From positions 1 through 64,000 of the IMG/VR virus record IMGVR_UViG_3300042907_001080: a stretch of 64,000 nucleotides of DNA; one strand, given 5' to 3'. This document shows, piece by piece, positions 19,174-33,446 of the stretch. The notes under the pieces are model-generated. The model saw only the letters and a program-made list of their open reading frames with translations, had not been told where the DNA came from and did not search any database. Each line of letters begins with the position of its first letter. Within the stretch, counting starts at the first letter, position 1. Made by a program: the position numbers and the translations under genes.

Positions 19174-19179
19174 TTGTCC

Positions 19180-20779: not shown

Positions 20780-21546
20780 TTAATATTGTCCTTATTATTA
20801 GCTCTAATAGTGGGGGGAACAGATGCTTGCAATTTGGCAAGTAATTGTTGATTATTAACAGTTGCTGGCGGCGCCAGCGGGTTATTATACATTTTAGGGT
20901 GCCATTGATGTATAACATACGGTGCTTCAACAAACGTTACATTTAATTTTTTATTTTTAATTCTTTGTAAAAATTCGTCGTCATCATAACTATGACCGAA
21001 AGCAAATTCTTCGTCAAAACCATTTAATTCACACAAGTTCTTCCTAGTAATTGCCGAGGTATAGTGATATCCCACTGGATGGTGAACACTATGATTAACC
21101 CATTTTGTTTTACTAGATTTTGTTCCGCCTACATCTATTGTACCGCCTTGATGTAGAATTCTTACATCGCCTTTGTTACATGCCCAGCAATGAAAGGTTA
21201 GATAATTGTCATCAGTTAATGTTTGATTCACATATGAGATTACATCGCCTTGATGACAGCACTCTGGATTTTGAATAATAATTTTGTCACCAGAACTTTC
21301 ACGGAATCCAACATTATACGGCACACAGGGATTAAACCAAGTCTTAGATCCTCGATCTGACATTTTAATTATTTTAATATTCAGCGACGGAAATTCACTA
21401 GGAACAGTATCTAAACTGTTTTCTAAATTGCTAAAATCATCTACAATTATTACTTCAAAGTCTTTTTCCCGACTTTGAATAAATGTTTTTAGAGTATGTC
21501 TTAATAATTCTAATCGATTATAATATGCCATTACTATTGATATCAT
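20776..21546 (-). CDS. GT2 family glycosyltransferase
   Basis: ISIVMAYYNR, IIVDDFS, YNVG, GFDEEF..G..YDDDEF, HQWH. Confidence 0.88.
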   Translation of the reverse strand: MISIVMAYYNRLELLRHTLKTFIQSREKDFEVIIVDDFSNLENSLDTVPSEFPSLNIKIIKMSDRGSKTWFNPCVPYNVGFRESSGDKIIIQNPECCHQGDVISYVNQTLTDDNYLTFHCWACNKGDVRILHQGGTIDVGGTKSSKTKWVNHSVHHPVGYHYTSAITRKNLCELNGFDEEFAFGHSYDDDEFLQRIKNKKLNVTFVEAPYVIHQWHPKMYNNPLAPPATVNNQQLLAKLQASVPPTIRANNKDNIK

Positions 21547-22142
21547 GATAGTTTTACCTCAGCCATTATATATTTGTTTCGTTGATTAATCACATTAACA
21601 ATTTCTACGCCGTCTTCTTGCTCGGGCATATTAGTCTTTTTGTATATCACTCGCAAATCCATTATAATTCTCGTATTTGCATGTGAATGTTTTAATATCA
21701 AATCTTTATAAGTGTTTACAGGATAGTGAAAACCACAAGACACCCACGACGTAATCAAATCAAATTTAACATCTTCTGGAATATTAATATTATTGCAATC
21801 AATTAAATGATATTTTTTAGTGCCTAATTTTTTTAATTCTGCGTCTACCTCTGACAATGGATGATAGAATAAGAAATCGTTAGCTGTCTTATTATATTTT
21901 CCAGTTGATGCTTCGGGAGATTTAGAGTCGTTATCTTTAGTATCGCCGTCTAACAACCACAGCTCGGAATTATATTTTTCATTGAACATTCTCGATTCCC
22001 AAGCAAGCCCGCAGCCAATATCTAAAATCTTCATTGGTGCGCTGCCTAAGAATTTATCTAGAATTTCAAAATTTTCTTTCTTGTGGCTTTGATATAATTC
22101 TGTTTCCCAGAGCCCGCCACTGCCTAACCACTGTTTTGTCAT
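21543..22142 (-). CDS. class I SAM-dependent methyltransferase
   Basis: ILDIGCGLA, KFDLITSWVSCGFHYP. Confidence 0.75.
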   Translation of the reverse strand: MTKQWLGSGGLWETELYQSHKKENFEILDKFLGSAPMKILDIGCGLAWESRMFNEKYNSELWLLDGDTKDNDSKSPEASTGKYNKTANDFLFYHPLSEVDAELKKLGTKKYHLIDCNNINIPEDVKFDLITSWVSCGFHYPVNTYKDLILKHSHANTRIIMDLRVIYKKTNMPEQEDGVEIVNVINQRNKYIMAEVKLS

Positions 22143-22483
22143 TTTGAATACCCCACAGTTTCACGCTCAATGTCATCGTGATCAAATTCTGCCCAATATA
22201 ATTCAAATGCTACACAGTCTGTGACTGCTTCAAATTGATGATATTCGCCCGGAGCAACCTTTGTATATTCGCCTGCCTTTAACAAAGTTTCGTCTACGAG
22301 ATCATAATTGCCTTTCCATACACGAATAATCATTTCACCGGACTCGACAAAGAATCCATTCCACTTGTATTTGTGTTTATGCTTAGAACATACTCCACCG
22401 GCGTTGGCTTCAATACGATGAAATTCTAATACACCGTTGGCTTCTAACAATTCTGTCTGTCCCCATACTTTTCCTGCTTTCAT
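22139..22483 (-). CDS. cupin (phosphomannose-isomerase-like / sugar epimerase)
   Basis: KVWG, CSKHKH, FFVESG, PGEYHQF; SD AAGGAG. Confidence 0.8.
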   Translation of the reverse strand: MKAGKVWGQTELLEANGVLEFHRIEANAGGVCSKHKHKYKWNGFFVESGEMIIRVWKGNYDLVDETLLKAGEYTKVAPGEYHQFEAVTDCVAFELYWAEFDHDDIERETVGYSK

Positions 22484-22502
22484 GCTATCTCCTTAATGTG
22501 TG

Positions 22503-22508
22503 TATTTA
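22503..22508 (-). promoter_or_regulatory. late-type promoter heading the 22483-15938 sugar operon
   Basis: TAAATA on minus strand, 19 nt upstream of cupin ATG with SD in between. Confidence 0.55.
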
Positions 22509-22509
22509 A

Positions 22510-23016
22510 TCAGATCAATTTATGTAATTGCAAAACTTCGCTTTGTCTTGAAACTTCTTTGACAAAGAACACGCAAGGTGGATTGACCTCCTCGCTGAGC
22601 GGCACAGTTAATAATTGTCCGTTTTTCATCTTAGGAAAATACCAACGCACATCCTGATAGATATTAACAATTTCTATAGGCATATATTCTGCTCTAAAGC
22701 CTTTGATCGGATTAAACACTAGTGCGTCAAATCCACGCTCATTGATACTAGTCAACGGTAACACTTCGGGATCAAGCCCACAATCTTTGTCACCTACTAC
22801 CATGCACCAATCCAAAGGCATTTGCACTTCATAGCCTCCTATGTTCAGCACTATAGCCGGTGAATTAAACGATTCTAAAAATATCAAAGGCATGAAATAA
22901 AAATCTGGATCCTGTGGATTTGAATTATCCAGCACCGAAAATCTTGTATCTTCGTCTACTTGATCCGGCAATTCGTTTAGATCAAATGCTTCATTGTTTA
23001 GTGTGAGTATTCTCAT
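22510..23016 (-). CDS. hypothetical beta-rich protein, possibly degenerate Hint-like fold
   Basis: IVLNIGGYEVQMPLDWCMVV pattern resembles intein block B without the TxxH residues; weak. Confidence 0.6.
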   Translation of the reverse strand: MRILTLNNEAFDLNELPDQVDEDTRFSVLDNSNPQDPDFYFMPLIFLESFNSPAIVLNIGGYEVQMPLDWCMVVGDKDCGLDPEVLPLTSINERGFDALVFNPIKGFRAEYMPIEIVNIYQDVRWYFPKMKNGQLLTVPLSEEVNPPCVFFVKEVSRQSEVLQLHKLI

Positions 23017-23654
23017 TTTAATTTTCCTAGTATTACGTTTCGGTGATCAGCATCCCATGCTAAAATGTCATAGTTAAAATTGATCTTACAGAAATCAATT
23101 GCTCTAGTATCACTGTTTTCTTGTTCTACAACCAACAGAGGATTGTATTTTTTAATGGTGTTAACTGCACCTTGTAAAACATTTAATTCGTATCCGTCTA
23201 CATCAATTTTAATATAATCAATATCTGAAAAATTAAATTCATCTATAGTGTATAGCTGTTCATCATACCACTTTTCTTGCGGTACTTTTCCAGCAGTTAT
23301 ACTTCCACCACCGCTTACCTTTATAATTTTATGTTCTTCACCCAACGCACATTTAAAATGTGTAATTTTAGATAGGTCAACATTTTTATGAAATAATTTT
23401 CTTCTTCGATAATCAAAACAAAAAACATGATTAAAATCTTTGTGAAGATATCTTGTATATTCGCCGTCTCTACAACCAACATCTATAGCATTTCTTTTTT
23501 CTGTAATAAAAGGAAGACTAGCTACCCACGTTTTTTTACAATGGTGATTAGGGAATTCTTGTGTGCCATCTGGGCTAAAGAAAAAATCAGTATCGTAAAA
23601 ATCCCAGTTAAATGTGTTTTCAGAAAACTGAGTAGGTTCAAGAGGATGTATCAT
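23013..23654 (-). CDS. FkbM-family methyltransferase
   Basis: AIDVGCRDG, CALG, IDYIKIDVDGYELNVLQGA. Confidence 0.85.
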   Translation of the reverse strand: MIHPLEPTQFSENTFNWDFYDTDFFFSPDGTQEFPNHHCKKTWVASLPFITEKRNAIDVGCRDGEYTRYLHKDFNHVFCFDYRRRKLFHKNVDLSKITHFKCALGEEHKIIKVSGGGSITAGKVPQEKWYDEQLYTIDEFNFSDIDYIKIDVDGYELNVLQGAVNTIKKYNPLLVVEQENSDTRAIDFCKINFNYDILAWDADHRNVILGKLK

Positions 23655-25144
23655 ATATTAACCTTGGTAATGGTAAAGGGGTATTTGGCCTCTTTATAAA
23701 ACTTTTTTCTTTCTGTTAGGTGCCGCTTGGCATATTTGCAGGTGCTGGTAATATCCCAGATCTCTACGTGATCTTTGTCTTCTGCTTTTCTAATGCCTCG
23801 CCCAATGCTTTGTATAACACGGACAAAGCTCTTTCCGGGTTCAAGAAGAACCAAATTAAAAATACGTGGAATATTAATACCCACAGCGGCCACACCATAA
23901 GTCGCCAAAATAATCTTGCCATCACTTGTTTTAATTTCATCATATTCTTCCTTGCGATCATCGAGTTTCATACCGCCGCTGACAAACACTGCCTCTGGTA
24001 TTAAGTCAATTAATTTTTTTCCTGTATCGATTCTGTTAATTAACACCAGAGTATTACCGGTAGCAGATAACGCAGTGATCTTACCGGCGATCCATTGTAG
24101 CCGATTATCGTCTGTGACAAGAAATGAGTATTCGTCCTGGAATGAATTAAACACCTGCACATCTGTGGTCTGTAACACATTGATATTCAATTGTGCTAAC
24201 ACACCTTTTTCCTGTAAATCATACGCAGATACTTGATTTATCACAGGACCTATACTGGCCAATATACCTTGAAACTCCCACTGTTCTTTAGGCACAGTTC
24301 CGGTGAGTCCCCAGCGTATGGCACAGTTACGAAAGTTTTGTGTCAGTAGTTTGGTCAATACTTCTGCCTTGGCTTGATGCACTTCGTCAACAATGATCGC
24401 GCAGACTCCTTCACAGAATTCTGCCAATGTCATGGTGTCGTTGTCATAGCTTTTCTTGTCTAACACATTCAAACTTTGCCAGGTGCATATGGTATGTGTC
24501 TTACCTAATTCTTTTCTATCTCCGAAGTAAACACCAACATCCAGGCCTAGGTTCTTGTAATCTTCTTCAGTTTGAACCACCAACGATTTATTAGGAACAA
24601 CTACCATTGTGCGACCATAAGGTTCGCATAGATGGCTTAAAGTTGCTGTGGTAATTGTTTTTCCAGCACCAGTGGCTACTTCTTGCAAGGCCTGAGGATT
24701 CTCTAAAAACTTGTTGATTACCTCATACTGATAGTCTCTTAGAACAATAGGTTCTCCTGCCTGTTGATGTCCTTTGGGCCAGACTTTGCCTTTGTCGGCC
24801 CAGTAATTTTCATCGATAGCAGCAAATTTTAATTCCTGATGCGGTCTAAGATCTTCGACTTCGATGTCATAACCTTCATCATCAATTACTGCTAGAATCA
24901 CATCAAGGTGTGCAAGATATCCACTGCCGCCAATGTTAAAATAAGTTTTAGTTCCGTCCCAACGTCCTAGTTTATAGGCCGGCATGTGTCGGGCATAAGG
25001 TAAATCGAACTTTAATTTATTGACAATTTTCCGTCGTGTTTCAACTCGTAGCCCTTCTACCTTGATGTTTACTTCGTCTTTGATTGTTAACTTACAGTTC
25101 AACAATTTTTTGTCCTTTGGTTTCTGTTGGTCTAGTATCACCAA
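23651..25144 (-). CDS. uvsW: SF2 DNA helicase UvsW
   Basis: WDG, LRDYQ, ATGAGKT, IIVDEVH, GLTGT, QSIGRGIR; true start probably a TTG near 25105. Confidence 0.9.
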   Translation of the reverse strand: MVILDQQKPKDKKLLNCKLTIKDEVNIKVEGLRVETRRKIVNKLKFDLPYARHMPAYKLGRWDGTKTYFNIGGSGYLAHLDVILAVIDDEGYDIEVEDLRPHQELKFAAIDENYWADKGKVWPKGHQQAGEPIVLRDYQYEVINKFLENPQALQEVATGAGKTITTATLSHLCEPYGRTMVVVPNKSLVVQTEEDYKNLGLDVGVYFGDRKELGKTHTICTWQSLNVLDKKSYDNDTMTLAEFCEGVCAIIVDEVHQAKAEVLTKLLTQNFRNCAIRWGLTGTVPKEQWEFQGILASIGPVINQVSAYDLQEKGVLAQLNINVLQTTDVQVFNSFQDEYSFLVTDDNRLQWIAGKITALSATGNTLVLINRIDTGKKLIDLIPEAVFVSGGMKLDDRKEEYDEIKTSDGKIILATYGVAAVGINIPRIFNLVLLEPGKSFVRVIQSIGRGIRKAEDKDHVEIWDITSTCKYAKRHLTERKKFYKEAKYPFTITKVNI

Positions 25145-26276
25145 GATATATCACACAGGGATGACACATAAACCAATCCCGTGCCATGGTATTTGTTGGT
25201 GGGAAAATGTTATTTGTTACTACTAGTGTAACATCATTGCTTGTCTTAAACAACCACTTAGCCGGCTTTGATTCAAAAATTAATATCCTACCAGTTTCGA
25301 CTTTGCCGCCAACTCCTGCAACCTTGATCCAGTCATTCAGCCCAGTAGTGGATTCTTTGTTTTCTCTAAAACACACCTTGATTTCTTCACGATCAACTCC
25401 ACTTTTTTCAGCATCGGCTACAAAACTTTGCAGCCACGGCAATGTGGCGCTGCTTCGATCTAGCAATATACATATTTGTCCGGAAAAAGATTTAGATAAC
25501 TCAAAAAAATCTTGATTGGTTTTCAACCAGAAGCTGTTTTCTTGGCTGGCTGCGATTTTTTCCACTAAAGTATGTGGTTTTTCTTGGTATAAAAACCCCA
25601 TACTTTTAGCTAATAACAAATCTTTGCTGATGTTACTAGTTTTATTACTTTGCCACCACTCCGCTGTTTCGTCACTGGCGTTTTTCAATTGAACGCCATT
25701 TATATCAACTTCGCTGTAAGGTGTAGCATCCTCAGAATTTTGCCAAATTTCTTCTACATCCGACAACACGTTCATAAAAGTATCGTCAATTTCAAAATTA
25801 TGCTTACAGACAAATTCATATAATGTGATTAAGTTATACTGATACAAATCTAAGCGTCTTACCTTATCATCGGGATCCCAAAAGCTGTAAGCGTAAAGAG
25901 TTTCTCGACGTTCAATCTCATCTTCAAATTCTTTTTTCAGCTGATACGGAAATTTTAGACAAATTTCCAGTTTGTTTTCACGCAGTTCTACATATATTTT
26001 TTTACTGAGATCCAACACTCTAAACGGCTTGCGCCATTTGAGATCTTGTAGTTGCGACCTATAATCAAAACCTGCCTGAGCAGATACAATCTTGTATTTT
26101 TCCAATAATTTTATGAGAAAATTCGCCTGATTTTTGGTCAGCTCACCGCTGTTGATAATTTTTTCATGAAAACTTGAGATGGGTGAAAAATCTTGACCTT
26201 GTATGGAGATTTTTTGTTGAGCAACAAGTTTATAAAACTCAACAAATATGTCTTCGGCAAATTCTGATGGTAACAT
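25092..26276 (-). CDS. hypothetical protein upstream of uvsW
   Basis: 394-aa ORF with own sigma70 promoter. Confidence 0.8.
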   Translation of the reverse strand: MLPSEFAEDIFVEFYKLVAQQKISIQGQDFSPISSFHEKIINSGELTKNQANFLIKLLEKYKIVSAQAGFDYRSQLQDLKWRKPFRVLDLSKKIYVELRENKLEICLKFPYQLKKEFEDEIERRETLYAYSFWDPDDKVRRLDLYQYNLITLYEFVCKHNFEIDDTFMNVLSDVEEIWQNSEDATPYSEVDINGVQLKNASDETAEWWQSNKTSNISKDLLLAKSMGFLYQEKPHTLVEKIAASQENSFWLKTNQDFFELSKSFSGQICILLDRSSATLPWLQSFVADAEKSGVDREEIKVCFRENKESTTGLNDWIKVAGVGGKVETGRILIFESKPAKWLFKTSNDVTLVVTNNIFPPTNTMARDWFMCHPCVIYLGDTRPTETKGQKIVEL

Positions 26277-26282: not shown

Positions 26283-26311
26283 AGTATACAGCCTTGATTT
26301 CTGGTTGTCAA
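26283..26311 (-). promoter_or_regulatory. sigma70-type promoter, 6 nt from ATG
   Basis: TTGACA-17 nt-TATACT-TGAATA-ATG. Confidence 0.85.
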
Positions 26312-27132
26312 CTGAATAATCTAGAAATTGGTATGCCTTGACGTATTTCGTCCACGGTCCACTCGGTGTGACATAGTTTTAAAAACCATTCAGTTCTGTC
26401 TGGCACATAGGGACTGTCTAATTCTGACCATTTGATGCTGAGATCTGCAGCTAGACTAGACGAATCACACATTATAGGAACACCATTTATGGCTGCTTGA
26501 ATAGCTGGTCCGCTGTTATGGTTGATCACGCAATGATAATTGTAAAAAATATCAAAACTGTCATAGGTATCGGGTATAAGCACGGGTCTTTCTACCTCCA
26601 CCCCAGATTGCTTGAACGGAAATGCTGACCGAGGATGATATCTCACACGGATTCTTCTATGAGTATGTTGTTTTATTTTTCCAATGGTGTCTGCTACCCA
26701 GTCTTTCATGGCAGGCATTCCTTGCCATTGTAGACTTTCTTGATGTTGGCAGGCTATTAATATTTCGCCACGACGTGTGGTGGCAATTGGCTGCAATTTA
26801 ACACCTAATTTTTCAGGTCTAGTTGGATCGAGATTGATATCGTTGCCGAATCTGCCAAGATTGTTGATATGGTCGAGACTGATGCGCCAAGTTTCGCCTC
26901 TTTTCAGATTTCCTACTTCTATGATCATCACAGATTTGCCTGATTGTCGACACTGTTCGTAGATTGTTTTATTTGAACGCATTCTACCGGCCCATAGCAC
27001 AGACCAAATCACAGACACGTCTTCGTTGTCATGCACAATGGTATGCCCTAGTTGTTTTAAACCTTGTTCTAGAGCGTCAAACACAGGAGGACTGTTTAAC
27101 GCACCGTATTCTCGATATAATTTGAAGCGCAT
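26308..27132 (-). CDS. GT-B glycosyltransferase, KpsS/KpsC (Capsule_synth)-like paralogue 1
   Basis: RYHPR, VINHNSGPAIQAAINGVP, HTEWTVDEIRQG. Confidence 0.6.
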   Translation of the reverse strand: MRFKLYREYGALNSPPVFDALEQGLKQLGHTIVHDNEDVSVIWSVLWAGRMRSNKTIYEQCRQSGKSVMIIEVGNLKRGETWRISLDHINNLGRFGNDINLDPTRPEKLGVKLQPIATTRRGEILIACQHQESLQWQGMPAMKDWVADTIGKIKQHTHRRIRVRYHPRSAFPFKQSGVEVERPVLIPDTYDSFDIFYNYHCVINHNSGPAIQAAINGVPIMCDSSSLAADLSIKWSELDSPYVPDRTEWFLKLCHTEWTVDEIRQGIPISRLFS

Positions 27133-27140
27133 AATGTTGA

Positions 27141-27178
27141 TAAATAATCTACGTAGTTAATACTGCCATATATTTATA
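27141..27178. promoter_or_regulatory. overlapping divergent late-type promoters
   Basis: TAAATA on + at 27141-27146 and TATAAATA on - at 27171-27178 in the 50-nt gap between divergent genes. Confidence 0.55.
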
Positions 27179-27182
27179 GATC

Positions 27183-27581
27183 ATGAATAAGATTAAAAAA
27201 AGACTGAGTAAATTGTCAAAAAACGCAGACAATGCGTTGGTAATTGGTGCCGCATTTGGTCAATTAGAACAACTGTTAGACTTATATTCAACAATTTTTG
27301 TTGTGAACGAAGACAACACAGAACTAAAAGCAAAAAATCTCATTTATAGACAAAGCATTGACAGATTAGATAGCATTGTAAATGTCAGGGCAGTATTTTT
27401 TGACATCAAACACATCTCTAAATTAGAAAGTCTGCAAACATTTTGGAAGAAAAATAATTCGTTGATATTCATTGAAGGCGGCGACGCTTTGCCTAGGGAT
27501 CTATCAACGCCGTTATACGATTCAGGGTGGCGATGCACCAGTCTCCAAGGAGCATTTCACGTATGGGAAAAACAACAATGA
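27183..27581 (+). CDS. hypothetical protein, possibly degenerate methyltransferase fold
   Basis: ALVIGAAFG near N-terminus; coupled to downstream GT. Confidence 0.65.
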   Translation: MNKIKKRLSKLSKNADNALVIGAAFGQLEQLLDLYSTIFVVNEDNTELKAKNLIYRQSIDRLDSIVNVRAVFFDIKHISKLESLQTFWKKNNSLIFIEGGDALPRDLSTPLYDSGWRCTSLQGAFHVWEKQQ

Positions 27582-28411
27582 AAATAGCAGTAGTAACAAC
27601 CTTTCACGAAGACGGACTTAACAAATATGCACAGCGTATGATCAACACCTTCTGCGAGAACTGGCCTACTGAGGTCATACTTCATTTATATCCCGAAAAG
27701 TGCAACCCTGCGATCCGTGATCACAGTCGTGTCACACTGAAACGTCTAGAAGAAGTTGCAGAACTAATGACTTTTAAAAACACATGGAAAGATGTGCCTA
27801 AGGCCAACGGCGATGTGTCGGCGGATCCTGTGAGATCTCTAAGAAAAGATTCAGGCAAAGGATTCAAATGGCATGCTGTGAGATTTGCACATAAAGTTTA
27901 TGCCATATTTGATTGTGTCAAAGAAACAGATGCGGATATTTTAATATGGATGGATGCAGATACTATTTGCCACAGTCCTATCACCATGACCGATCTATAC
28001 AAGATGATTCCCACTGATAGTGAGCTGTGCTATCTGGGTCGAAGGGGCAAATATTCAGAGTGTGGTTTGTATGCAATGAATCTACGATCGCCTAACATTC
28101 AACTTTTTCTCAAAGAATTTCAAAGAGTCTATGATCAAGCCGAACAAGGAATTTTTCAGTTAGCTGAGTGGCATGACAGTTTTGTGTTTGATGCGGTACG
28201 AGTAAAATTTCCGCAGATGCGACAACTAGATTGGGCAGCACACTTGCATGACCTACGTCCAGCACCAGGAATGACGTCGGGCGAAGGACACCCATTAATT
28301 AATAGCCAATGGGGCGCATGGCTGGATCACCTCAAGGGTGGTAGAAAGAAATTAGGTCGTAGTAAACCTGAAGATCTAAAAGTTCAAAGAACAGAAGCGT
28401 ATTGGCGTTAG
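27578..28411 (+). CDS. GT-A glycosyltransferase
   Basis: FAHKVYA, IWMDADT (DxD), WHDSFVFD, DHLKG; start at ATG 27578. Confidence 0.75.
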   Translation: MKIAVVTTFHEDGLNKYAQRMINTFCENWPTEVILHLYPEKCNPAIRDHSRVTLKRLEEVAELMTFKNTWKDVPKANGDVSADPVRSLRKDSGKGFKWHAVRFAHKVYAIFDCVKETDADILIWMDADTICHSPITMTDLYKMIPTDSELCYLGRRGKYSECGLYAMNLRSPNIQLFLKEFQRVYDQAEQGIFQLAEWHDSFVFDAVRVKFPQMRQLDWAAHLHDLRPAPGMTSGEGHPLINSQWGAWLDHLKGGRKKLGRSKPEDLKVQRTEAYWR

Positions 28412-29334
28412 AGATACTGTTTGAAAAATTGCCAAGCTTCTCCGGATCGAAGTTCATTAAAATTCCAATGGCACATAGATATCTGTTCAATCCATGATTT
28501 TCTCTCGGGCATCTCGGGATTTTCTAATCGACTTAAATCTGTATTCGCTACTTGGTAACTTTGACTACGCTGTGGATTATGATCTGTAAGAAATGCCGGA
28601 ACTCCTTCAATAATACTAGCCACGCTTGGACTACTGTTGTATACTACTGTGGCCCATGCACCTCTTAAATCGTCGACTAATCTTTCATTAACACTTAATC
28701 GTACACCTTTGCCGTAAATTTTTAAAATTGATTTAATTTTTTTATCTCCGGGGTGTGTTCGAACAACAATCTGACGTTTTCTACTATGCTGTCTAATTTG
28801 TGCAATAGTTTGATCTAACCATGTCTGAACATCTAGCCCACCCATGCTCCACCCACCGTGTCGCTGTAGGCAAATCAATATGTGCTCTCCCTGTGTTCTC
28901 CAAGGCTGCAAACTTATGCGTAAATCGTGACTAATTTTTTGCCAACGTCCAGGATCGATATCTCGATCAAAGTAAAATCCAGTAGTAGGAAAAACTCCAT
29001 CAAAACTGTATCTCAGATAGGTTTTGGTATTATTCGGATCAGCATATAAAAACAAATTGCTGTCTACGATTAAACTTCTCCGATTGTTTTCTTTCTGCAA
29101 TGCAACGGCATCTTGTCTCAATTGAAGATGAGGAGCCGATTTACCATGTTCGTGAACAAACCCCTGTATCAATGCTACATCACAAGGCACAGCATTCATC
29201 CCAGTGTGTGCAATGGCATGATCCCCGGACGATTTCACTCCCTGCAAAAAATTATCCAAGATCAAAGGTTTTTCTGGATTCTTGTTTGTAGGCGGGATTC
29301 CACCATAATAGGCCACAGCGGTGATGTTAGACAC
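28408..29334 (-). CDS. GT-B KpsS/KpsC-like paralogue 2
   Basis: RTHPGD, VVYNSSPSVASIIEGVP, CHWNFNELRSG. Confidence 0.6.
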   Translation of the reverse strand: MSNITAVAYYGGIPPTNKNPEKPLILDNFLQGVKSSGDHAIAHTGMNAVPCDVALIQGFVHEHGKSAPHLQLRQDAVALQKENNRRSLIVDSNLFLYADPNNTKTYLRYSFDGVFPTTGFYFDRDIDPGRWQKISHDLRISLQPWRTQGEHILICLQRHGGWSMGGLDVQTWLDQTIAQIRQHSRKRQIVVRTHPGDKKIKSILKIYGKGVRLSVNERLVDDLRGAWATVVYNSSPSVASIIEGVPAFLTDHNPQRSQSYQVANTDLSRLENPEMPERKSWIEQISMCHWNFNELRSGEAWQFFKQYL

Positions 29335-30421
29335 TGTGATATTCCTTTACTATATTGTATGCAGTTCCGTCCATGAGTTCATTGTAGGTAAACTGACAAT
29401 AACTAAGCCATGCTAGCCAATCGCCAAGCGGGCCATAATATAAATCATTGATCTGTGCTAGATTATTTCTAGTAACAGAGTTACTAACATGTTTGTCAAG
29501 AGTGATAGCAGGAATGCCTGCCCAGATAGATTCCACAGCACTGTTTGAATTGATACTAACCGTGCAATAGTAGTCTCCATCTAGCAGTGTTTGATAAAGA
29601 CTAGTGCGTGTTTTCTTATTAGTTTTAGATCTAATTTCTATAGGTCTATCTGTGTGTTTTTTCAGTTCATCGACGATTTGTTTGGTCCAAGATTCCACAT
29701 CTACATGCATGATGCTGGCTGCAAACTCGCCGGGCTCTACCACTAATATTTTTTTGCCAGTGTTACGCCAAGGTCTAGGAAATTCTGTGAAATTTTTCAA
29801 TCTATCTGCAGGTGCAACAAATTGATTATTAAAATGCAGGTGATTTCTTGTAAGCCTATGCCATTTTTTATTAGATTCAACAAAATTAGTATACCCGCTA
29901 TCTATGAACCAGAACGGAAGATGATTATCAATTTTATCTACAATGATATTTTCATTGCCTACTGTGTTTCGTAATAGACAGTCTTCTGCGCTGTTCAAGA
30001 AATCTCTGCGACGAATCATAGTTGCTGTGGGATCAATTTGTAGTCCAACGGTTTTGATAAAATATTGTTGATCACTATTCATATAGGCGTCAATGATATT
30101 TTCAGCACCTAATTTTTCTATCACGTATTCAGCCTTTTTGTGTATTTGGCCGAAATAATTTTTTCTGTAATTTTCTAAAACTGTGTTGACTTTACTGCGC
30201 CATTCTATAGCATCCGCAGAGACTCCCCGCCATAGTTTTTCTTTAAACTTATCACGGAATTTTTCAATATCAAATTTATGATGATCTCTTTTTTCGATGA
30301 TAAAGTGTATAGCTTCTGCAGTTTTACGCTCATCTAACTCAATGTGTGCGCAATGATCTTTTAAATCTATCAGACTGATAAGATAGTGTGCAAGTTCTTT
30401 GTCGTTTACTAGTAATTTCAT
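29327..30421 (-). CDS. GT-B KpsS/KpsC-like paralogue 3
   Basis: FIDSGY, VSINSNSAVESIWAGIP, CQFTYNELMDG. Confidence 0.6.
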   Translation of the reverse strand: MKLLVNDKELAHYLISLIDLKDHCAHIELDERKTAEAIHFIIEKRDHHKFDIEKFRDKFKEKLWRGVSADAIEWRSKVNTVLENYRKNYFGQIHKKAEYVIEKLGAENIIDAYMNSDQQYFIKTVGLQIDPTATMIRRRDFLNSAEDCLLRNTVGNENIIVDKIDNHLPFWFIDSGYTNFVESNKKWHRLTRNHLHFNNQFVAPADRLKNFTEFPRPWRNTGKKILVVEPGEFAASIMHVDVESWTKQIVDELKKHTDRPIEIRSKTNKKTRTSLYQTLLDGDYYCTVSINSNSAVESIWAGIPAITLDKHVSNSVTRNNLAQINDLYYGPLGDWLAWLSYCQFTYNELMDGTAYNIVKEYHSV

Positions 30422-31188
30422 TGATTTAATATTTTCCAGGCTGTACCGTTGGTAATTTCTTCTTGGGTGAACTGGCCATACGCCAAGGTCTTACACATTT
30501 CGGTTATATTTTCTGTCGAAGGTTTGAATGGATTTCCGAGTGTGGATAGATCGGTAGATGCCAGAGTGCTGGCTGCGCAAGGCACCGAAACAAATGCCGG
30601 GATGCCGTATAGCACACTTTCCAATGATGCTATGCTGTTGAATGACACCGTGGCGTAAACTCCAGAATTAAATGCGTCGTAAATTGAATATCCATGTCCC
30701 CTTTCACTTCTTGATCCTTTCGCCCTGATTTCAATCGGCAAATTAGAATATGTTTTTATTTTTTCAGTAGTTTCTTTAATCCATGTATCACAATCAATAT
30801 CAAAATATCTACAGGCTTTGGGATTCGGCAATACCAATAATATCTTTTTATTAAAAGGTTTCCAGCCTTTCCAACTCAATCTAGGATCTTGGTTAAGAAG
30901 ATTGATCCATCGATCGGCGGGAACTGATTGAGGGGTAATATGTTGTAGATCATTTTTTACAATTCGGTGCCACCATTTTTTACCTGACTTGTTTCCTACA
31001 CTTGGAAAATTACCTACATAACCAGTATCTATGTAATAAAAATCTCTGTTCGTCTTTTTGCACTCTACTATTTCGCTTTTGCTTGTTACCCCACGAACAA
31101 CCATAGGGTTATCAATGTTGGACATATCCGTAGTACAAAAATGATTCGACCCTACGACCAGAGATTCTTCTAAAGATAGTTCTTTCAT
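30418..31188 (-). CDS. GT-B KpsS/KpsC-like paralogue 4
   Basis: YIDTGY, VSFNSIASLESVLYGIP, GQFTQEEITNG. Confidence 0.6.
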   Translation of the reverse strand: MKELSLEESLVVGSNHFCTTDMSNIDNPMVVRGVTSKSEIVECKKTNRDFYYIDTGYVGNFPSVGNKSGKKWWHRIVKNDLQHITPQSVPADRWINLLNQDPRLSWKGWKPFNKKILLVLPNPKACRYFDIDCDTWIKETTEKIKTYSNLPIEIRAKGSRSERGHGYSIYDAFNSGVYATVSFNSIASLESVLYGIPAFVSVPCAASTLASTDLSTLGNPFKPSTENITEMCKTLAYGQFTQEEITNGTAWKILNQ

Positions 31189-31979
31189 AATGTTAATAAC
31201 ATCTCCATGGCTTTGCCGTTTCTCAATTCTGAATTATGAAACTGCCCGTATGACAAATGACAGGCCCACGCATATAATTTATCTTGGTCGGGATAGTAAG
31301 GTTCGTTTATTTTAGATAGATCCTGCAAACTAACAGGACTAGCTGCATTAGCCGGTGCTAGAGTAAATGCAGGTATTCCAAGGAATACAGCTTCTGTAGC
31401 TGCTACACTGTTGAATGTAACTAATGCAAATACATCATCATTGAGGGCCTGTTCTAGTGTATCGTTAACTGTTCTATCTAATCTTTTAGGTGCCCGCTCT
31501 CTAACTACCACAGGTCTATCTGTGTATTTTTTTATTTCATTTACTGTATGTTCTAACCAAATATCTAGATTGTAGTCATAGAATCGCATGGGTTTTTCAT
31601 CTGGTTTCGCTACTAGTATCTTTCTTCCATCTTTCTTCCAGGGCTGAAACTTTTTATTAAAATGTTTAAATCTATCATCTTTTCTTGGCACGATCTCGCC
31701 ATGTTGTAGATTGTTCTTTACTATACGATGCCAATTTTTCCAACCATTGGGATTTGAATCAGTTCTCTCATTGCCAAAATATCCCGTGTCTATATAATAG
31801 AAATCACGACTATCTTCCCAACATTGGTGTATCCACTTTTTCTTAAGTATACCTCTTAATACAATAGGATCAATACTGTCGTTGTAATTAAAATCTTCAG
31901 TTGAAGTTGTTCTAGTGTTGCACCCCTGTGCAAACATGTTAATATATGGATCTTTGCCGTCTTTGCTTAAAAAGATCAT
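31185..31979 (-). CDS. GT-B KpsS/KpsC-like paralogue 5
   Basis: YIDTGY, VTFNSVAATEAVFLGIP, GQFHNSELRNG; start at ATG 31979 (ATGA overlap). Confidence 0.6.
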   Translation of the reverse strand: MIFLSKDGKDPYINMFAQGCNTRTTSTEDFNYNDSIDPIVLRGILKKKWIHQCWEDSRDFYYIDTGYFGNERTDSNPNGWKNWHRIVKNNLQHGEIVPRKDDRFKHFNKKFQPWKKDGRKILVAKPDEKPMRFYDYNLDIWLEHTVNEIKKYTDRPVVVRERAPKRLDRTVNDTLEQALNDDVFALVTFNSVAATEAVFLGIPAFTLAPANAASPVSLQDLSKINEPYYPDQDKLYAWACHLSYGQFHNSELRNGKAMEMLLTL

Positions 31980-32656
31980 AGACCGTGCTGTAGACAATAA
32001 TCTACGTAAATTTTTTCTCTATGCCATTCGTTGGAGAAATCACCCTGGTCTGAAAATTCATGGAAGCAAGGTGTTCCTAGGGTATAGTGAACTAATTTTG
32101 CTTGAGGGTTCCACTCGTATTCAATATCCAGCCAGTTCCATTCTACTGGAAGTTCGCCGACTAAGTCGTCAGTAAGCCATGTAAATCTATGTACCTGTGC
32201 TCCAGTGGCATTTTGTATAAACTCCGGAGTAACCACAGCATTGGCAGGGTGCCCACAGTTCCAAAGTATCACACTAGACCAATTTTTACAAGGATAGTCT
32301 TCGTTCTTGGCACCAAGATACTTTTCAGACATTTTAGTTTTGTAGTCGTGTTTAACAACCATAACTGCTTTTGAATTATCTCTTAATGCCCATAGTTTTT
32401 CAATGTCGTCACGCAATAACATATCGCCGTCCATGAATATTGCCCAACCTTTATATTGCATTAAGTGTGGAACAAGGAAGCGACTGTAGATAAAATGATT
32501 ACTACCGTCGGTGTGTTTTTCTTCGTAGTCTTTTAATATGTTCAATGCCAACGGGTTAATACTCACTGGATGACTAGAATGTCTAATAATACTGTTTGAA
32601 CACACATGGTATGCTATGGCTTCTCGGGGATCATACCCAATAAAAATTGGAATCAT
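31976..32656 (-). CDS. GT8-like glycosyltransferase
   Basis: IFIGYDPRE, FIYSRFLVP, FMDGDML, KNWSSVILWN, WNWL, LVHYTLGTP; start at ATG 32656. Confidence 0.8.
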   Translation of the reverse strand: MIPIFIGYDPREAIAYHVCSNSIIRHSSHPVSINPLALNILKDYEEKHTDGSNHFIYSRFLVPHLMQYKGWAIFMDGDMLLRDDIEKLWALRDNSKAVMVVKHDYKTKMSEKYLGAKNEDYPCKNWSSVILWNCGHPANAVVTPEFIQNATGAQVHRFTWLTDDLVGELPVEWNWLDIEYEWNPQAKLVHYTLGTPCFHEFSDQGDFSNEWHREKIYVDYCLQHGL

Positions 32657-33414
32657 TTTCTTTCTATATCCTCTTCTATGCACTGATCTCCGTATTGTAT
32701 TTCTACAACTTTCAGAGGCTGATCGGTTTCGTTGCATAACTTATGCCATTGATGCTTGTTGATGTGTATATGTTGAAATCGAGTAAATTCACCTAGCAGA
32801 TCCATGTCTGTAGATTGGTCAACAGTATAGACTGTAGCGATGCCTTCAGACACGAACCAATGTTCTGCTCGATTTTGATGGCGTTGCATGCTGAGACAGG
32901 TTTTAGGTAATACCGTAAGTTCTTTGACTTTGACTTCTTGACCTTGTTCATGCAAGACACGATAGTATCCCCAGGCCCTACCGGTCTTAGGAGCCTTCCA
33001 TTCTTGAAGAATCCACGAACTAGAATTCATTTTATTTTCGCCGCCCACACCAAATACAAATGACAAATTGGAATCTACAACATCCATCTCTGGAATGTTA
33101 TCTTTGGTCCTATCGCCGCCATTGGCAAATATCAGTTTGGCATCGGGATAATGTGCTCGCACTTGTTGAATAAAATGTTTTGCTGATCCGTCATCGTCAT
33201 TAAAGGTATAAACTTCGTCAACCATCGATAGATTATTGATGATGCACAGTCGTTCGTTCCACGGCATAAAGGCCGCGCCTTTTTTACGGACAAGCCAATC
33301 GTCAGAATTTAATCCAACAATTAACATGTCTCCTAGAGTTTTTGCAGCTTTGAAGTAGGCAATGTGCCCGGAATGTAGGGGATCAAATCCACCAGTAATT
33401 AAAACGATTTTCAT
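32653..33414 (-). CDS. cytidylyltransferase-family nucleotidyltransferase (RfaE-II/TagD-like) fused to a PMI-type cupin
   Basis: GGFDPLHSGH (HxGH), GLNSD, NGGDR, SSS; C-terminal RAWGYYRVL, SMQRHQNRAEHW. Confidence 0.85.
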   Translation of the reverse strand: MKIVLITGGFDPLHSGHIAYFKAAKTLGDMLIVGLNSDDWLVRKKGAAFMPWNERLCIINNLSMVDEVYTFNDDDGSAKHFIQQVRAHYPDAKLIFANGGDRTKDNIPEMDVVDSNLSFVFGVGGENKMNSSSWILQEWKAPKTGRAWGYYRVLHEQGQEVKVKELTVLPKTCLSMQRHQNRAEHWFVSEGIATVYTVDQSTDMDLLGEFTRFQHIHINKHQWHKLCNETDQPLKVVEIQYGDQCIEEDIERK

Positions 33415-33430
33415 GCAGATATTTATCTGC
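33415..33430 (-). promoter_or_regulatory. late-type promoter within a palindrome, heading the 33414-28408 operon
   Basis: TAAATA (33420-33425) 5 nt before ATG; embedded in GCAGATA-TT-TATCTGC inverted repeat. Confidence 0.65.
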
Positions 33431-33446
33431 GTATATTATCTAGTAT

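What the first reader, a model, noticed from the sequence alone, without database searches (positions are those of the whole stretch)
26308..33414. Five tandem paralogues of a KpsS/KpsC-like GT-B family, inserted between uvsW and uvsY
Seen: five ORFs share V..NS....E/A....G.P followed by (Q/H/E)(F/W)...E(I/L)..G; two keep an R.HP motif (RYHP, RTHP) while three have R.K/R instead; they are cotranscribed with or adjacent to a GT8-like enzyme and an HxGH cytidylyltransferase-cupin fusion. Known: KpsS/KpsC are beta-Kdo transferases that use CMP-Kdo and carry an HP motif; uvsY and uvsW are neighbours in T4. Inference: a duplicated and diverged GT series could add successive linkages to an oligosaccharide from a CMP/CDP-activated donor; the block looks like an 8-kb insertion at the uvsY-uvsW junction.
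Basis: partly seen in the sequence, partly recalled or inferred. Interest (0 to 1): 0.72.

Follow-up and report, generated by a model that had tools for sequence, protein, structure and literature searches.

The report
Phage glycan island with KpsC-like transferases
A large lake-water phage carries five old, diverged copies of an unnamed sugar-transferase family distantly related to the bacterial capsule enzymes KpsC/KpsS, set in a roughly 17-kb, strain-variable sugar-assembly region whose target (virion, host envelope or DNA) is still unknown.

Summary
Five ORFs (A 26308-27132, B 28408-29334, C 29327-30421, D 30418-31188, E 31185-31997, all minus strand) are mutually homologous and share the stated motifs. 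They sit beside a GT8 enzyme (F) and a HIGH-nucleotidyltransferase/PMI-cupin fusion (G).

A confident model of B (pLDDT 94.8) is closest to the Kdo transferases KpsC, WbbB and KrkA in two independent structure searches.

They are not members of those families. The Asp nucleophile of the defining QXXXD motif is absent from all five and from all 128 aligned relatives. The HP motif survives only in A and B.

The family is very large, almost wholly phage-borne and has no Pfam model. It splits into type I (Gln + R-x-H-P; A, B) and type II (Pro + R-x-K-P + Glu; C, D, E).

The copies are old paralogues, each with orthologues in related lake phages, not recent tandem duplicates. The "insertion" is a conserved, mosaic locus of a jumbo-phage clade. 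Sugar genes continue beyond uvsW, and the genome encodes KdsA.

Most likely this is a late-expressed glycan assembly line, one linkage per enzyme. Donors and acceptor are inferred only.

The parts
32653..33414 (-). G: fusion of a HIGH-type nucleotidyltransferase (RfaE-domain-II/TagD-like, residues 1-125) with a type-II PMI cupin domain (residues 145-252). First gene of the G-F-E-D-C-B operon.
   Evidence: PF01467 2.4e-11 and PF01050 8.2e-21. TIGR02199 rfaE_dom_II 76.6 bits and TIGR01518 45.7 bits, both below their cut-offs. Orthologues in all related islands.
31976..32656 (-). F: GT8-family GT-A glycosyltransferase, 226 aa from the corrected start. Its ATG overlaps the stop of G (ATGA).
   Evidence: PF01501 30 bits against cut-off 24.3, and phrog_28018 6.7e-34. 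Start read. Natural fusions of an F-like N-terminus with an E-like C-terminus occur in at least 7 metagenomic proteins.
31185..31997 (-). E: type II paralogue (Pro, R-E-R-A-P, Glu). Probable true start 31979, an ATGA overlap with F.
30418..31188 (-). D: type II paralogue (R-A-K). 4-nt overlaps with E and C.
   Evidence: Its allele is swapped in some relatives: D is 51% identical where E is 91% and C 90%.
29327..30421 (-). C: type II paralogue (R-S-K) with an N-terminal extension of about 110 aa.
28408..29334 (-). B: type I paralogue (Gln157, R-T-H-P). This is the copy that was modelled.
   Evidence: AF2 model pLDDT 94.8, pTM 0.92. Fold searches. hhalign to KpsC and KpsS.
27527..28411 (+). g: GT-A nucleotide-diphospho-sugar transferase (GT8/Nucleotid_trans-like, with a D-A-D motif). 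Converges on B with a 4-nt overlap. Probable start 27563.
   Evidence: PF00535 weak, 0.0022. Atlas feature search gives viral GT8/PF03407 clusters at 0.95-0.96. Orthologues are 59-88% identical in relatives. Mosig_00189 is 31% identical.
27183..27581 (+). m: 132-aa protein of unknown function, co-oriented with g. Highly variable between relatives (30-89% identity).
   Evidence: No family hit. Synteny.
27133..27182 (.). Divergent 50-nt intergenic region. It carries two late-promoter-like ATAAATA motifs, one 39 nt upstream of A (27171-27178, minus strand) and one 37 nt upstream of m (27140, plus strand).
   Evidence: Comparable motifs are kept in relatives. The motif precedes baseplate, tail and virion genes genome-wide.
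26308..27132 (-). A: type I paralogue (Gln, R-Y-H-P). It forms its own transcription unit.
33415..33446 (-). uvsY-G spacer holding a conserved hairpin that contains ATAAATA 5-6 nt before the ATG of G.
   Evidence: The same ATAAATA-N5-6-ATG layout precedes the tail-tube and head-tail-adaptor genes.
16618..23654 (-). Second sugar block beyond uvsW. Genes in order: RmlD-like reductase, Polysacc_synt_2 dehydratase, 2OG-Fe(II) oxygenase, UDP-GlcNAc 2-epimerase, methyltransferase, GT2, methyltransferase-like protein, small cupin, phrog_11279 protein, FkbM methyltransferase. The set reads as a UDP-L-FucNAc-type pathway plus tailoring enzymes.
   Evidence: PF02719 2.5e-96, PF02350 8.8e-93, PF04321 4.8e-22, PF13640 1.8e-16, PF00535 8.2e-9, PF05050 8.3e-11. 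The pathway assignment rests on the known CapE/F/G (FnlA/B/C) scheme and is an inference.
23651..26276 (-). uvsW helicase (23651-25144) and X (25092-26276). These are DNA-metabolism genes that split the two sugar blocks and are not part of the glycan machinery.
   Evidence: phrog_16 6.8e-73. The X model (pLDDT 86.6) gives only weak SF2-helicase-like matches such as Mfd, XPB and UvsW 1rif.

Best explanation
What they are. A-E are five anciently diverged, soluble, single-module glycosyltransferases. They belong to a very large, almost exclusively phage-borne and so far unnamed GT-B family. That family is a remote branch of the CMP-ulosonic-acid transferase superfamily (Pfam Capsule_synth; CAZy GT107 KpsC/KpsS, GT99 WbbB, GT140 KrkA).

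The machinery. They work alongside two GT-A enzymes (F, a GT8; and g), the nucleotidyltransferase-cupin fusion G, and a second block beyond uvsW (GT2, three to four methyltransferases, a UDP-L-FucNAc-type pathway). Together these form a roughly 17-kb glycan assembly line. Each transferase adds one linkage to a strain-variable oligosaccharide. F and E act as a coupled pair.

What is shown. Homology, the fold of B, the state of each motif, operon structure, synteny and mosaicism, and the presence of KdsA.

What is inferred.
(a) Nucleotide. All five bind a cytidine-nucleotide donor, because the cytosine-binding Arg and phosphate-binding Ser are near-invariant.
(b) Type I donor. A and B keep the Gln that binds the Kdo carboxylate and the His-Pro that binds the CMP phosphate, so they probably use CMP-Kdo or another CMP-ulosonic acid. 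Supply would come from phage KdsA plus host KdsB.
(c) Type II donor. C, D and E have Pro, Lys and Glu at those positions and probably use a different donor, possibly the product of G.
(d) Mechanism. The Asp nucleophile is absent, so transfer cannot go through the covalent Asp-Kdo adduct. It probably proceeds by direct attack of an acceptor hydroxyl, activated by the conserved acidic residue of the N-terminal domain (position 91 in B numbering).
(e) Timing. Expression is late, together with virion genes.
(f) Acceptor, in my estimate: the phage's own virion proteins about 40%, a lipid-anchored host envelope glycan (LPS core or capsule-linker type) about 30%, DNA under 10%.
For: Homology and family
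- The five are mutually homologous.
- The family has 4,749 clusters at 50% identity with E<=1e-3, and none of the five has a Pfam hit.
- Atlas neighbours are 86-100% viral, and some clusters carry PF05159.

Fold
- Fold of B.
- Profile links to WbbB (E 0.34, weak alone) and KpsS. KpsS is one of only two weak hits in the whole E. coli CFT073 chromosome.

Motifs
- In the alignment to E. coli KpsC, B Gln157 aligns with Gln156, B Gly161 with Asp160, and HP with HP.
- Across 128 sequences, position 157 is Pro in 72 and Gln in 39; position 161 is never Asp; position 194 is Lys in 82, His in 39 and Arg in 7.
- Gln and His co-occur in 38 sequences: 38 of the 39 with Gln, and 38 of the 39 with His.
- Type-specific conserved residues are listed.
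- The roles of these residues come from PMC12887879 and PMC10148158.

Age of the paralogues
- Each of A-E forms its own clade with SH-aLRT support of 95-100.

Operon
- G/F, F/E, E/D and D/C overlap by 4 nt; C/B overlap by 8 nt.

F-E coupling
- Natural fusions join a GT8-like N-terminus (28-46% identical to F) to an E-like C-terminus (38-44% identical to E). Two-module tandem proteins of the family also exist.
- The GT8 + family pairing recurs in Pelagibacter phage Mosig and Caulobacter phage CcrColossus.

Island conservation
- 26 related loci carry the island between uvsY and X-uvsW, with mosaic identities.

Sugar supply
- KdsA scores 406 bits against a cut-off of 242. It is conserved in 192 related viral stretches, including a 353-kb, 98%-complete genome that also carries three family members.
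- The second sugar block lies beyond uvsW.

Late timing
- 27 of 47 ATAAATA motifs lie within 60 nt upstream of a start codon in a genome that is 96% coding.
- Genes behind them include baseplate hub, gp5-like, gp10-like, fibre-like, tail tube and neck genes.
- A, m and G each carry the motif.

Cellular location
- No membrane-spanning segment in any island protein.
Against: - No enzyme activity, donor or acceptor was tested.
- Only B was modelled. The fold of C-E rests on sequence homology and language-model features.
- The residue correspondences come from a weak hhalign match (probability 4% to KpsC-N, 84% to KpsS). They are not from a residue-level structural superposition, so a nucleophile contributed from elsewhere in the fold cannot be excluded.
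- No CMP-sugar synthetase (PF02348), NeuB or SIS isomerase was found in this genome, and PF02348 is also absent from the 98%-complete relative.
- KdsA lies about 190 kb from the island among unrelated auxiliary genes. Mosig and CcrColossus carry family members but no KdsA.
- The nucleotidyltransferase half of G scores better against ADP-heptose synthase than against a cytidylyltransferase.
- The late-promoter reading rests on a short motif. TATAAATA itself is not enriched in the window: 3 found against 4.8 expected.
- RNA-library contigs of relatives cover the island, but this does not prove transcription.
Confidence: 0.55

Rival explanations
1. The five are true retaining beta-Kdo transferases (functional GT107/GT99 members). 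Like KpsS and the two modules of KpsC, they would build a poly-Kdo chain with alternating linkages on a host lipid, using host CMP-Kdo boosted by phage KdsA.
For: The nearest structures are all Kdo transferases. A and B keep Gln and R-x-H-P. The phage encodes KdsA. Two-module tandem proteins of the family exist, as in KpsC.
Against: The absolutely conserved Asp nucleophile of QXXXD is missing in all five and in 128 relatives (definition from PMC12887879 and PMC10148158). C, D and E also lack the Gln and His. No copy reaches the PF05159 threshold. No kps export genes were seen in the island.
Confidence: 0.1
2. The island hypermodifies the phage DNA, building an oligosaccharide on a modified base as T4, RB69, DLP3 and the methyltransferase/TET/GT gene clusters do. 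Its variability would be driven by host restriction systems.
For: The island sits among DNA-metabolism genes: gp32, uvsX, uvsY and uvsW. Phage DNA glycans of up to three sugars, including heptose, and strain variation are documented (PMC13326640 and bioRxiv 10.1101/2023.12.21.572611). Most island transferases are mildly basic, pI 8.2-9.0.
Against: No thymidylate-synthase-family hydroxymethylase or hydroxylase was found in this genome or in a 98%-complete relative. No Tet/JBP match was found, though the control for that search was silent. The known DNA transferases are GT4-like, beta-GT-like or JGT-like, not KpsC-like. The exact sequence assembles from at least 24 ordinary lake metagenome runs. 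Eight transferases plus methyltransferases is far more than any known DNA glycan needs.
Confidence: 0.08
3. The same assembly line acts on the host envelope rather than the virion. It would remodel the LPS core/LOS or a capsule linker of the Gram-negative host, to block superinfection or to stop progeny sticking to debris. This is the usual reading of 'LPS genes' in aquatic T4-like phages.
For: Every family present is typical of LPS-core or capsule assembly: GT8, KpsC/S-like, RfaE-like, KdsA and the L-FucNAc pathway here, plus GT25 and GT9 in relatives. All structural relatives act on lipid-linked acceptors. Core-type assembly needs no phage-encoded flippase or polymerase. The hypothesis is stated for pelagimyophages and cyanophages (PMC7029224 and PMC12801897).
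Against: All three transcription units carry late-gene motifs. In CcrColossus the cluster lies between tail and lysis genes. No membrane anchor was detected.
Confidence: 0.3

Closest known systems
KpsC / KpsS (CAZy GT107; Pfam PF05159 Capsule_synth) and relatives LipA/LipB, FixF, LpsZ
   Same: Best structural matches: Foldseek E 5e-9, VIA Z 14.8, and all of the Swiss-Prot top 8. Same two-domain GT-B-like architecture. Shared motifs: the cytosine-binding Arg of (K/R)XHP, the N-S phosphate-binding motif followed by G.P, the Gln and His-Pro in A and B, and an acid-x-Gly-aromatic motif in the N-terminal domain that resembles KpsC E66-D-G-F. Two-module fusions exist, as in KpsC.
   Different: No Asp nucleophile. 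His is replaced by Lys/Arg and Gln by Pro in C, D, E and in most of the family. The proteins are shorter (256-364 aa) and have no C-terminal membrane anchor. Below the Pfam threshold. Phage-borne. No kps export context.
WbbB N-terminal domain (GT99) and KrkA (GT140), retaining Kdo transferases
   Same: WbbB is the only PDB sequence hit of the family profile (E 0.34, too weak alone); the match lies over the HP and N-S-S motifs. VIA Z is 13.5 for WbbB and 12.2 for KrkA.
   Different: Same differences as for KpsC/KpsS. Both use the QXXXD Asp for a covalent Kdo adduct.
LPS-like or 'cell-wall synthesis and modification' gene clusters of aquatic T4-like phages (pelagimyophages, cyanomyophages such as S-SCSM2R)
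   Same: Hypervariable clusters with GT8, rfaE-like, UDP-glucose dehydrogenase, methyltransferase and kdsA genes, of unknown target. Pelagibacter phage Mosig carries the same g-F-E-x-D cassette (F 49% identical).
   Different: In those reports the KpsC-like members are labelled hypothetical. Here there are five paralogues, in a jumbo phage whose UvsX is closest (61-67%) to those of Atu_ph07, CBB and GAP32 (my grouping: RaK2-like). The locus sits between uvsY and uvsW rather than in the tail-fibre region.
Virus-encoded virion glycosylation systems (mycobacteriophage capsid and tail-tube glycans; chlorovirus and mimivirus glycan clusters)
   Same: Soluble virus-encoded GT-A and GT-B enzymes, methyltransferases and rare-sugar pathways, varying clade by clade. 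A pyruvyl transferase occurs in relatives' islands. The comparison to these systems rests on my own knowledge of them.
   Different: No glycosylated virion protein has been shown here, and the enzyme families differ.

Membership tests
Retaining beta-Kdo transferases (GT107 KpsC/KpsS, GT99 WbbB, GT140 KrkA) | Modified GT-B fold closest to solved Kdo transferases | tested here: met
   Model of B at pLDDT 94.8. Foldseek PDB top 20 are KpsC/WbbB. VIA-align top 4 are KpsC, WbbB, KpsC, KrkA at Z 14.8-12.2. Swiss-Prot top 8 are all Capsule_synth proteins. Only B was modelled.
Retaining beta-Kdo transferases (GT107/GT99/GT140) | QXXXD motif: Gln binds the Kdo carboxylate and the absolutely conserved Asp is the nucleophile | tested here: not met
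   B Gln157 aligns with KpsC Gln156, but B Gly161 aligns with Asp160. A reads Q-H-Q-E-S. C, D and E have Pro at the Gln position. No Asp occurs at that column in 128 family members.
Retaining beta-Kdo transferases and bacterial sialyltransferases | (K/R)XHP CMP-binding motif | tested here: inconclusive
   Met in A (RYHP) and B (RTHP). Not met in C (RSKT), D (RAKG) or E (RERAP). Family-wide the His position is Lys in 82, His in 39 and Arg in 7, while the Arg is kept in 124 of 128.
Retaining beta-Kdo transferases | [quoted passage not shown] | tested here: met
   N-S is invariant in the five. Ser234 is kept in 121 of 128 relatives. The motif aligns to WbbB T-I-N-S-S and KpsS T-I-N-S-T.
Retaining beta-Kdo transferases | General-base Glu in the N-terminal domain (KpsC Glu66 in E-D-G-F; WbbB equivalent) | tested here: inconclusive
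   Position 91 (B numbering) is a conserved acid: Asp in 91% of type II, within I-D-T-G-Y, and Glu in 64% of type I. No alignment to KpsC covers this region, so the equivalence is inferred from motif likeness only.
Pfam PF05159 Capsule_synth | Score above the gathering threshold | tested here: not met
   No Pfam hit for any of A-E at E<=0.1. The family profile against KpsS gives hhalign probability 84%, E 8e-6, over the C-terminal motifs only.
Retaining beta-Kdo transferases | Uses CMP-beta-Kdo and forms a beta-Kdo linkage via a covalent adduct | not testable with these tools
   Needs enzyme assays and intact-mass spectrometry.
Group 2 capsule (kps) or ABC-transporter O-antigen systems | Co-located export genes (KpsMT/ED or Wzm/Wzt) and CMP-Kdo synthetase | tested here: not met
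   None among the ORFs scanned between 12.7 and 39 kb. No PF02348 in this genome or in the 98%-complete relative.
Phage DNA glycosylation systems (T4, RB69/DLP3, MT-TET-GT clusters) | An enzyme that makes a hydroxylated or hydroxymethylated base (thymidylate-synthase homologue or TET/JBP dioxygenase) | tested here: not met
   PF00303 is absent from this genome and from the 353-kb relative. PF12851 is absent, but that control rang nowhere, so this part is uninformative.
GT8 (gene F) | Pfam PF01501 above threshold | tested here: met
   30 bits against cut-off 24.3. phrog_28018 at 6.7e-34.
Bifunctional GMP/PMI (ManC/AlgA type II PMI) (gene G) | N-terminal NTP_transferase domain plus C-terminal PMI cupin | tested here: not met
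   The cupin PF01050 is present at 8.2e-21. The N-terminal domain is instead a HIGH-type PF01467 fold, closest to RfaE domain II.

The most novel reading that the evidence does not exclude
The family would be a new, phage-specific glycosyltransferase class that evolved from CMP-Kdo transferases by losing the covalent-adduct nucleophile. In this lake jumbo-phage clade its five paralogues, with GT8 partners, would decorate the virion with a Kdo- or other ulosonic-acid-containing, strain-variable oligosaccharide. That would be a bacterial-type acidic glycan built by a phage on its own particle, through a catalytic mechanism not yet described in this fold.
Probability: 0.2. Interest if true: 0.8.

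Novelty: new variant of a known kind. Interest (0 to 1): 0.58.

Why it matters
Aquatic T4-like and jumbo phages often carry clusters of "LPS-like" genes whose purpose has been guessed at for twenty years. This locus puts a name and a fold on one of their commonest unannotated components. That component is a family with thousands of sequence clusters, almost all viral, and no Pfam model.

The work also yields specific hypotheses that can be tested directly:
- two donor classes, marked by a covarying Gln/His against Pro/Lys pair;
- loss of the Asp nucleophile;
- a coupled GT8 + KpsC-like pair that is fused into one protein in other phages;
- late expression.

The same genotype recurs in many lake metagenomes, and the island is mosaic between close relatives. 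The glycan is therefore probably under diversifying selection, as surface antigens are.

If the enzymes do transfer Kdo or a related acid without a covalent intermediate, they would extend the mechanistic range of the GT99/GT107/GT140 fold. They could also be useful glyco-engineering tools.

Tried and rejected
- Near-identical DNA in isolated phages: none found by megablast.
- PHROGs and NCBIfam for A-E: no hits.
A scan of genomes related to E. coli was not possible from a W handle. The family's presence in cellular genomes was therefore not measured.
- X (25092-26276) as a possible glycan acceptor or extra transferase: rejected. Its model gives only weak SF2-helicase-like matches.
- Collagen-like acceptor proteins, suggested by the 2OG oxygenase and by GT25 in relatives: only one 6-triplet G-X-Y run in the whole genome. 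Dropped.
- F-E complex prediction: no verdict (score 0.01, controls not run). This is not evidence either way.
- KdsA co-occurrence as a general rule: rejected. Mosig and CcrColossus have family members but no KdsA.
- TATAAATA enrichment in the window alone: not significant. Only the genome-wide placement of ATAAATA relative to start codons is informative.
- Metatranscriptome contigs: they cover parts of g, C, E, F and G at 80-95% identity, so they come from relatives. They cannot separate RNA from carried-over DNA and give no transcript ends.

Full report
**1. The observation**

The region 26308-33414 holds nine ORFs.

| Label | Coordinates | Strand | Length / note |
|---|---|---|---|
| G | 32653-33414 | - | |
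| F | 31976-32737 as listed | - | true start 32656 |
| E | 31185-31997 | - | |
| D | 30418-31188 | - | |
| C | 29327-30421 | - | |
| B | 28408-29334 | - | |
| A | 26308-27132 | - | |
| m | 27183-27581 | + | 132 aa |
| g | 27527-28411 | + | 294 aa |

- A-E are mutually homologous. BLASTP bit scores are D-E 161, C-E 114, C-D 98, B-C 66, A-B 62, B-D 57 and B-E 54. The weakest pairs, A-C/D/E, score 33-36.
N-S, G.P and E...G are invariant. A has RYHP and B has RTHP. C, D and E have R-S-K, R-A-K and R-E-R.
- F is a GT8 enzyme (PF01501, 30 bits against a cut-off of 24.3).
- G fuses a HIGH-type nucleotidyltransferase (PF01467) to a PMI cupin (PF01050).
- uvsW and uvsY flank the block. uvsX and gp32 follow uvsY.

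- The five copies are interrupted by the inverted m-g unit.
- A 394-aa gene, X, lies between A and uvsW.
- The starts of F and E are later than the longest ORFs suggest.

**2. What the five proteins are**

Sequence searches
- None hits Pfam, PHROGs or NCBIfam.
- A profile search of 1.84 billion representative proteins finds 4,749 clusters at E<=1e-3 and 643 at E<=1e-30.
- A second search of 90%-identity clusters returns more than 5,000 proteins. Most are about 267 aa and labelled hypothetical, often on contigs of 100-260 kb.
- Language-model neighbours of E are 86-100% viral clusters. Some are auto-named capsule polysaccharide biosynthesis protein, and a minority of members carry PF05159.

Structure
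- An AlphaFold2 model of B, built with 127 homologues, is confident: pLDDT 94.8, pTM 0.92.
- Foldseek against the PDB ranks KpsC and WbbB structures 1-20 (E 5e-9 to 2e-6), with KrkA close behind.
- An aligner that does not rely on Foldseek puts KpsC (Z 14.8), WbbB (13.5), KpsC (13.3) and KrkA (12.2) above every generic GT-B enzyme (at most 10.8).
- Against Swiss-Prot models the top eight are KpsC, FixF, LipA, LipB, KpsS and LpsZ.

Profile comparisons
- The family profile hits only WbbB in the whole PDB sequence set (E 0.34, too weak alone). The match lies over the HP and N-S-S motifs.
- It matches E. coli KpsS by hhalign at 84% probability.
- In the whole CFT073 chromosome, KpsS is one of only two weak hits.

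**3. Why they are not members of GT107/GT99/GT140**

These families are defined by three elements (PMC12887879 and PMC10148158):
- QXXXD. The Gln binds the Kdo carboxylate. The Asp forms the covalent Kdo adduct.
- (K/R)XHP. The Arg or Lys binds cytosine. The His acts on the CMP phosphate.
- A general-base Glu in the N-terminal domain.

I fetched E. coli CFT073 KpsC and KpsS and aligned them to the family.
- B Gln157 aligns with KpsC Gln156.
- B Gly161 occupies the place of Asp160.
- HP aligns with HP.
- A reads Q-H-Q-E-S, with no Asp at the fifth position.

In 128 aligned family members:

| Position (B numbering) | Role in Kdo transferases | Residues seen |
|---|---|---|
| 157 | Gln of QXXXD | Pro 72, Gln 39 |
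| 161 | Asp nucleophile | never Asp |
| 194 | His of HP | Lys 82, His 39, Arg 7 |

Gln and His go together: 38 sequences carry both, out of 39 with Gln and 39 with His. This defines two types.
- Type I: Gln ... R-x-H-P. Includes A and B.
- Type II: Pro ... R-x-K-P, plus a Glu five residues after the N-S serine. Includes C, D and E.

Features common to both types:
- the cytosine-binding Arg (124 of 128);
- the phosphate-binding Ser (121 of 128);
- G.P and the C-terminal E...G;
- an acidic residue at position 91. In type II it sits in I-D-T-G-Y, which resembles KpsC's E66-D-G-F around its general base.

My reading, which is inference, is as follows. The nucleotide pocket is conserved. The sugar pocket comes in two versions. 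The covalent-adduct chemistry is lost.

**4. Age and evolution**

A maximum-likelihood tree of 106 family members places each of A, B, C, D and E in its own clade (SH-aLRT 95-100).
- Each clade contains orthologues from related phages.
- Other metagenomic lineages lie between the clades.
- A and B fall in one half of the tree; C, D and E fall in the other.

They are therefore old paralogues, not recent tandem duplicates.

**5. The locus in relatives**

Contigs carrying close homologues show the same frame: gp32, uvsX, a 77-78-aa gene, uvsY, the island, X, then uvsW. Flank proteins are 77-100% identical. Twenty-six loci contain the whole island.
- G, F, E, B and g are present in all.
- m and A are present in nearly all.
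- C and D are present in most.
- Some islands add a sixth family member, truncated UDP-glucose-dehydrogenase-like genes, epimerases, up to four methyltransferases, GT25, GT6 or a pyruvyl transferase.

Identities are mosaic. In L039, for example: E 91%, D 51%, C 90%, B 73%, g 85%, m 30%, A 61%, X 43%.

GC content of the island (0.36-0.42) matches the genome (0.40).

The block is thus an ancestral, recombining hot spot of a phage clade. It is an "insertion" only in comparison with T4.

**6. The wider sugar machinery**

Beyond uvsW lie further sugar genes:
- an FkbM methyltransferase;
- a small cupin;
- two more methyltransferase-like genes;
- a GT2;
- a UDP-GlcNAc 2-epimerase (8.8e-93);
- a 2OG-Fe(II) oxygenase;
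- a Polysacc_synt_2 dehydratase (2.5e-96);
- an RmlD-like reductase.

By the known CapE/F/G scheme, this set reads as a UDP-L-FucNAc-type pathway (inference).

Elsewhere in the genome:
- A genuine Kdo-8-phosphate synthase is encoded at G000:C1:219947-220807 (406 bits against a cut-off of 242).
- It is conserved in 192 related viral stretches.
- One of these is a 353-kb, 98%-complete genome that also holds three family members.
- No KdsB/NeuA-type synthetase, NeuB or SIS isomerase was found here. PF02348 is also absent from that complete relative.

**7. Coupling and expression**

Operon structure
- G/F, F/E, E/D and D/C overlap by ATGA, and C/B by 8 nt, so G to B is one operon.
- m and g run the other way and end 4 nt inside B.
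- A stands alone.

F-E coupling
- At least seven metagenomic proteins are natural fusions of an F-like GT8 domain and an E-like domain. Two others are tandem family domains.
- The GT8 + family pairing recurs in Pelagibacter phage Mosig, with g-like and second family genes. It also recurs in Caulobacter phage CcrColossus, between tail and lysis genes.

Late-gene motif
- 27 of 47 ATAAATA motifs lie within 60 nt upstream of a start codon, in a genome that is 96% coding.
- Genes behind them include baseplate hub, gp5-like, gp10-like, fibre-like, tail-tube and head-tail-adaptor genes.
- A (39 nt), m (37 nt) and G (6 nt, inside a conserved hairpin) all carry the motif. Relatives keep comparable motifs.

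I infer late expression from this.

Other properties
- No island protein has a membrane segment.
- The 5.9-kb island is found word for word in at least 24 lake-water metagenome runs from 2020-2025.
- Freshwater RNA libraries hold contigs of relatives over g, C, E, F and G. This is compatible with transcription but does not prove it.

**8. Phage identity**

- UvsX is 61-67% identical to those of Sinorhizobium phage Phosso, Agrobacterium phage Atu_ph07, Pectobacterium phage CBB, Cronobacter phage GAP32 and Xanthomonas phage XbC2. These are jumbo myoviruses distantly related to T4.
- The record is 281,658 bp and estimated 80% complete.

**9. Mechanism and rivals**

Best explanation (confidence 0.55)
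- A late-expressed assembly line in which each transferase adds one linkage to a strain-variable oligosaccharide.
- Type I enzymes probably use CMP-Kdo or another CMP-ulosonic acid.
- Type II enzymes use another donor, possibly the product of G.
- Transfer proceeds without an Asp adduct.

Acceptor (unresolved)
- I lean to virion proteins, at about 40%. The reasons are the late motifs, the soluble enzymes, the tail-adjacent clusters in other phages and the antigen-like mosaicism.
- Host LPS-core or capsule-linker lipids come next, at about 30%. All the enzyme families are envelope-type, and all structural relatives act on lipid-linked acceptors.

DNA glycosylation (under 10%)
- No thymidylate-synthase-family hydroxylase exists in this genome or in the complete relative.
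- Known DNA transferases belong to other folds.

True retaining beta-Kdo transferases (about 10%)
- This is unlikely because the nucleophile is missing.

**10. Novelty**

- LPS-like gene clusters and kdsA in aquatic T4-like phages are already described (PMC7029224 and PMC12801897).
- Occasional automatic annotations already say "capsule".
- What appears new:
  - recognition of a huge phage-specific branch of the Kdo-transferase fold that lacks the nucleophile;
  - its two covarying donor-site types;
  - the fused or adjacent GT8 partner;
  - the five-paralogue mosaic island in an abundant lake phage.
- I rate it a new variant of a known kind, with interest 0.58.

Noticed in passing
G000:C1:219947-220807 (outside the window; L104:8947-9807, minus strand): The phage encodes a bona fide Kdo-8-phosphate synthase, KdsA (NF003543, 406 bits against cut-off 242). 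It lies among other auxiliary genes: a UvsE-like endonuclease, a superoxide-dismutase-like protein, IscU and a QueD-like protein. KdsA is conserved in 192 related viral stretches.
   Followed up: partly
window 16618-23654, minus strand: A second sugar block lies on the far side of uvsW. It holds a UDP-L-FucNAc-type trio (Polysacc_synt_2, RmlD-like, Epimerase_2), a 2OG-Fe(II) oxygenase embedded in that operon, a GT2, a small cupin and three to four methyltransferases including an FkbM type.
   Followed up: partly
window 25092-26276, minus strand (gene X): X is a 394-aa protein just upstream of uvsW. It varies far more between relatives (34-100% identity) than its neighbours uvsW and uvsY, and it co-varies with A and m. 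Its model gives only weak SF2-helicase-like matches. It might be a degenerate helicase-like partner of UvsW.
   Followed up: partly
window 33415-33446; also upstream of 44423-45511 and 50874-51632: ATAAATA lies only 5-7 nt before the ATG of about ten genes, including the tail tube, the head-tail adaptor and G. At G it sits inside a conserved hairpin. This could mean leaderless late mRNAs or a translational element.
   Followed up: partly
window 27100-33000: The exact island sequence (99-100% of sampled 31-mers) occurs in at least 24 lake-water metagenome runs, listed under 24 different sample and study codes and dated 2020-2025. This is a widespread and stable freshwater phage genotype.
   Followed up: no
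proteins P0006, P0013, P0021, P0023, P0028, P0045, P0050; P0010, P0047; P0018: Natural fusions exist in metagenomes. Some join a GT8-like domain to a family domain. Some carry two family domains in tandem, like KpsC. One (P0018) has weak HAD-phosphatase Pfam hits in the N-terminal part ahead of the family domain.
   Followed up: partly
L039, L044, L047, L050, L061 (related islands): Some relatives carry a sixth, very divergent family member on the opposite strand, next to g. L009 and L064 carry another next to uvsY. In several phages the D allele is only 51-54% identical although E and C are 72-92% identical, which suggests cassette exchange.
   Followed up: partly
L127 record (IMGVR_UViG_3300044640_001495, 353,123 bp, 98% complete): This is a near-complete genome of the clade. 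It carries KdsA but only three family members, at 284-291 kb. Two of the three matches contain one in-frame TGA, probably where overlapping genes meet.
   Followed up: no
L092 (E. coli CFT073 kps locus, 3.512-3.529 Mb): In the K2 capsule region 2, a 131-aa gene is annotated as pantoate--beta-alanine ligase. It sits next to a CDP-glycerol glycerophosphotransferase gene. From its size and neighbours I suspect a small HIGH-type cytidylyltransferase (not tested); if so, the HIGH-nucleotidyltransferase plus GT-B pairing would be an old capsule theme.
   Followed up: no
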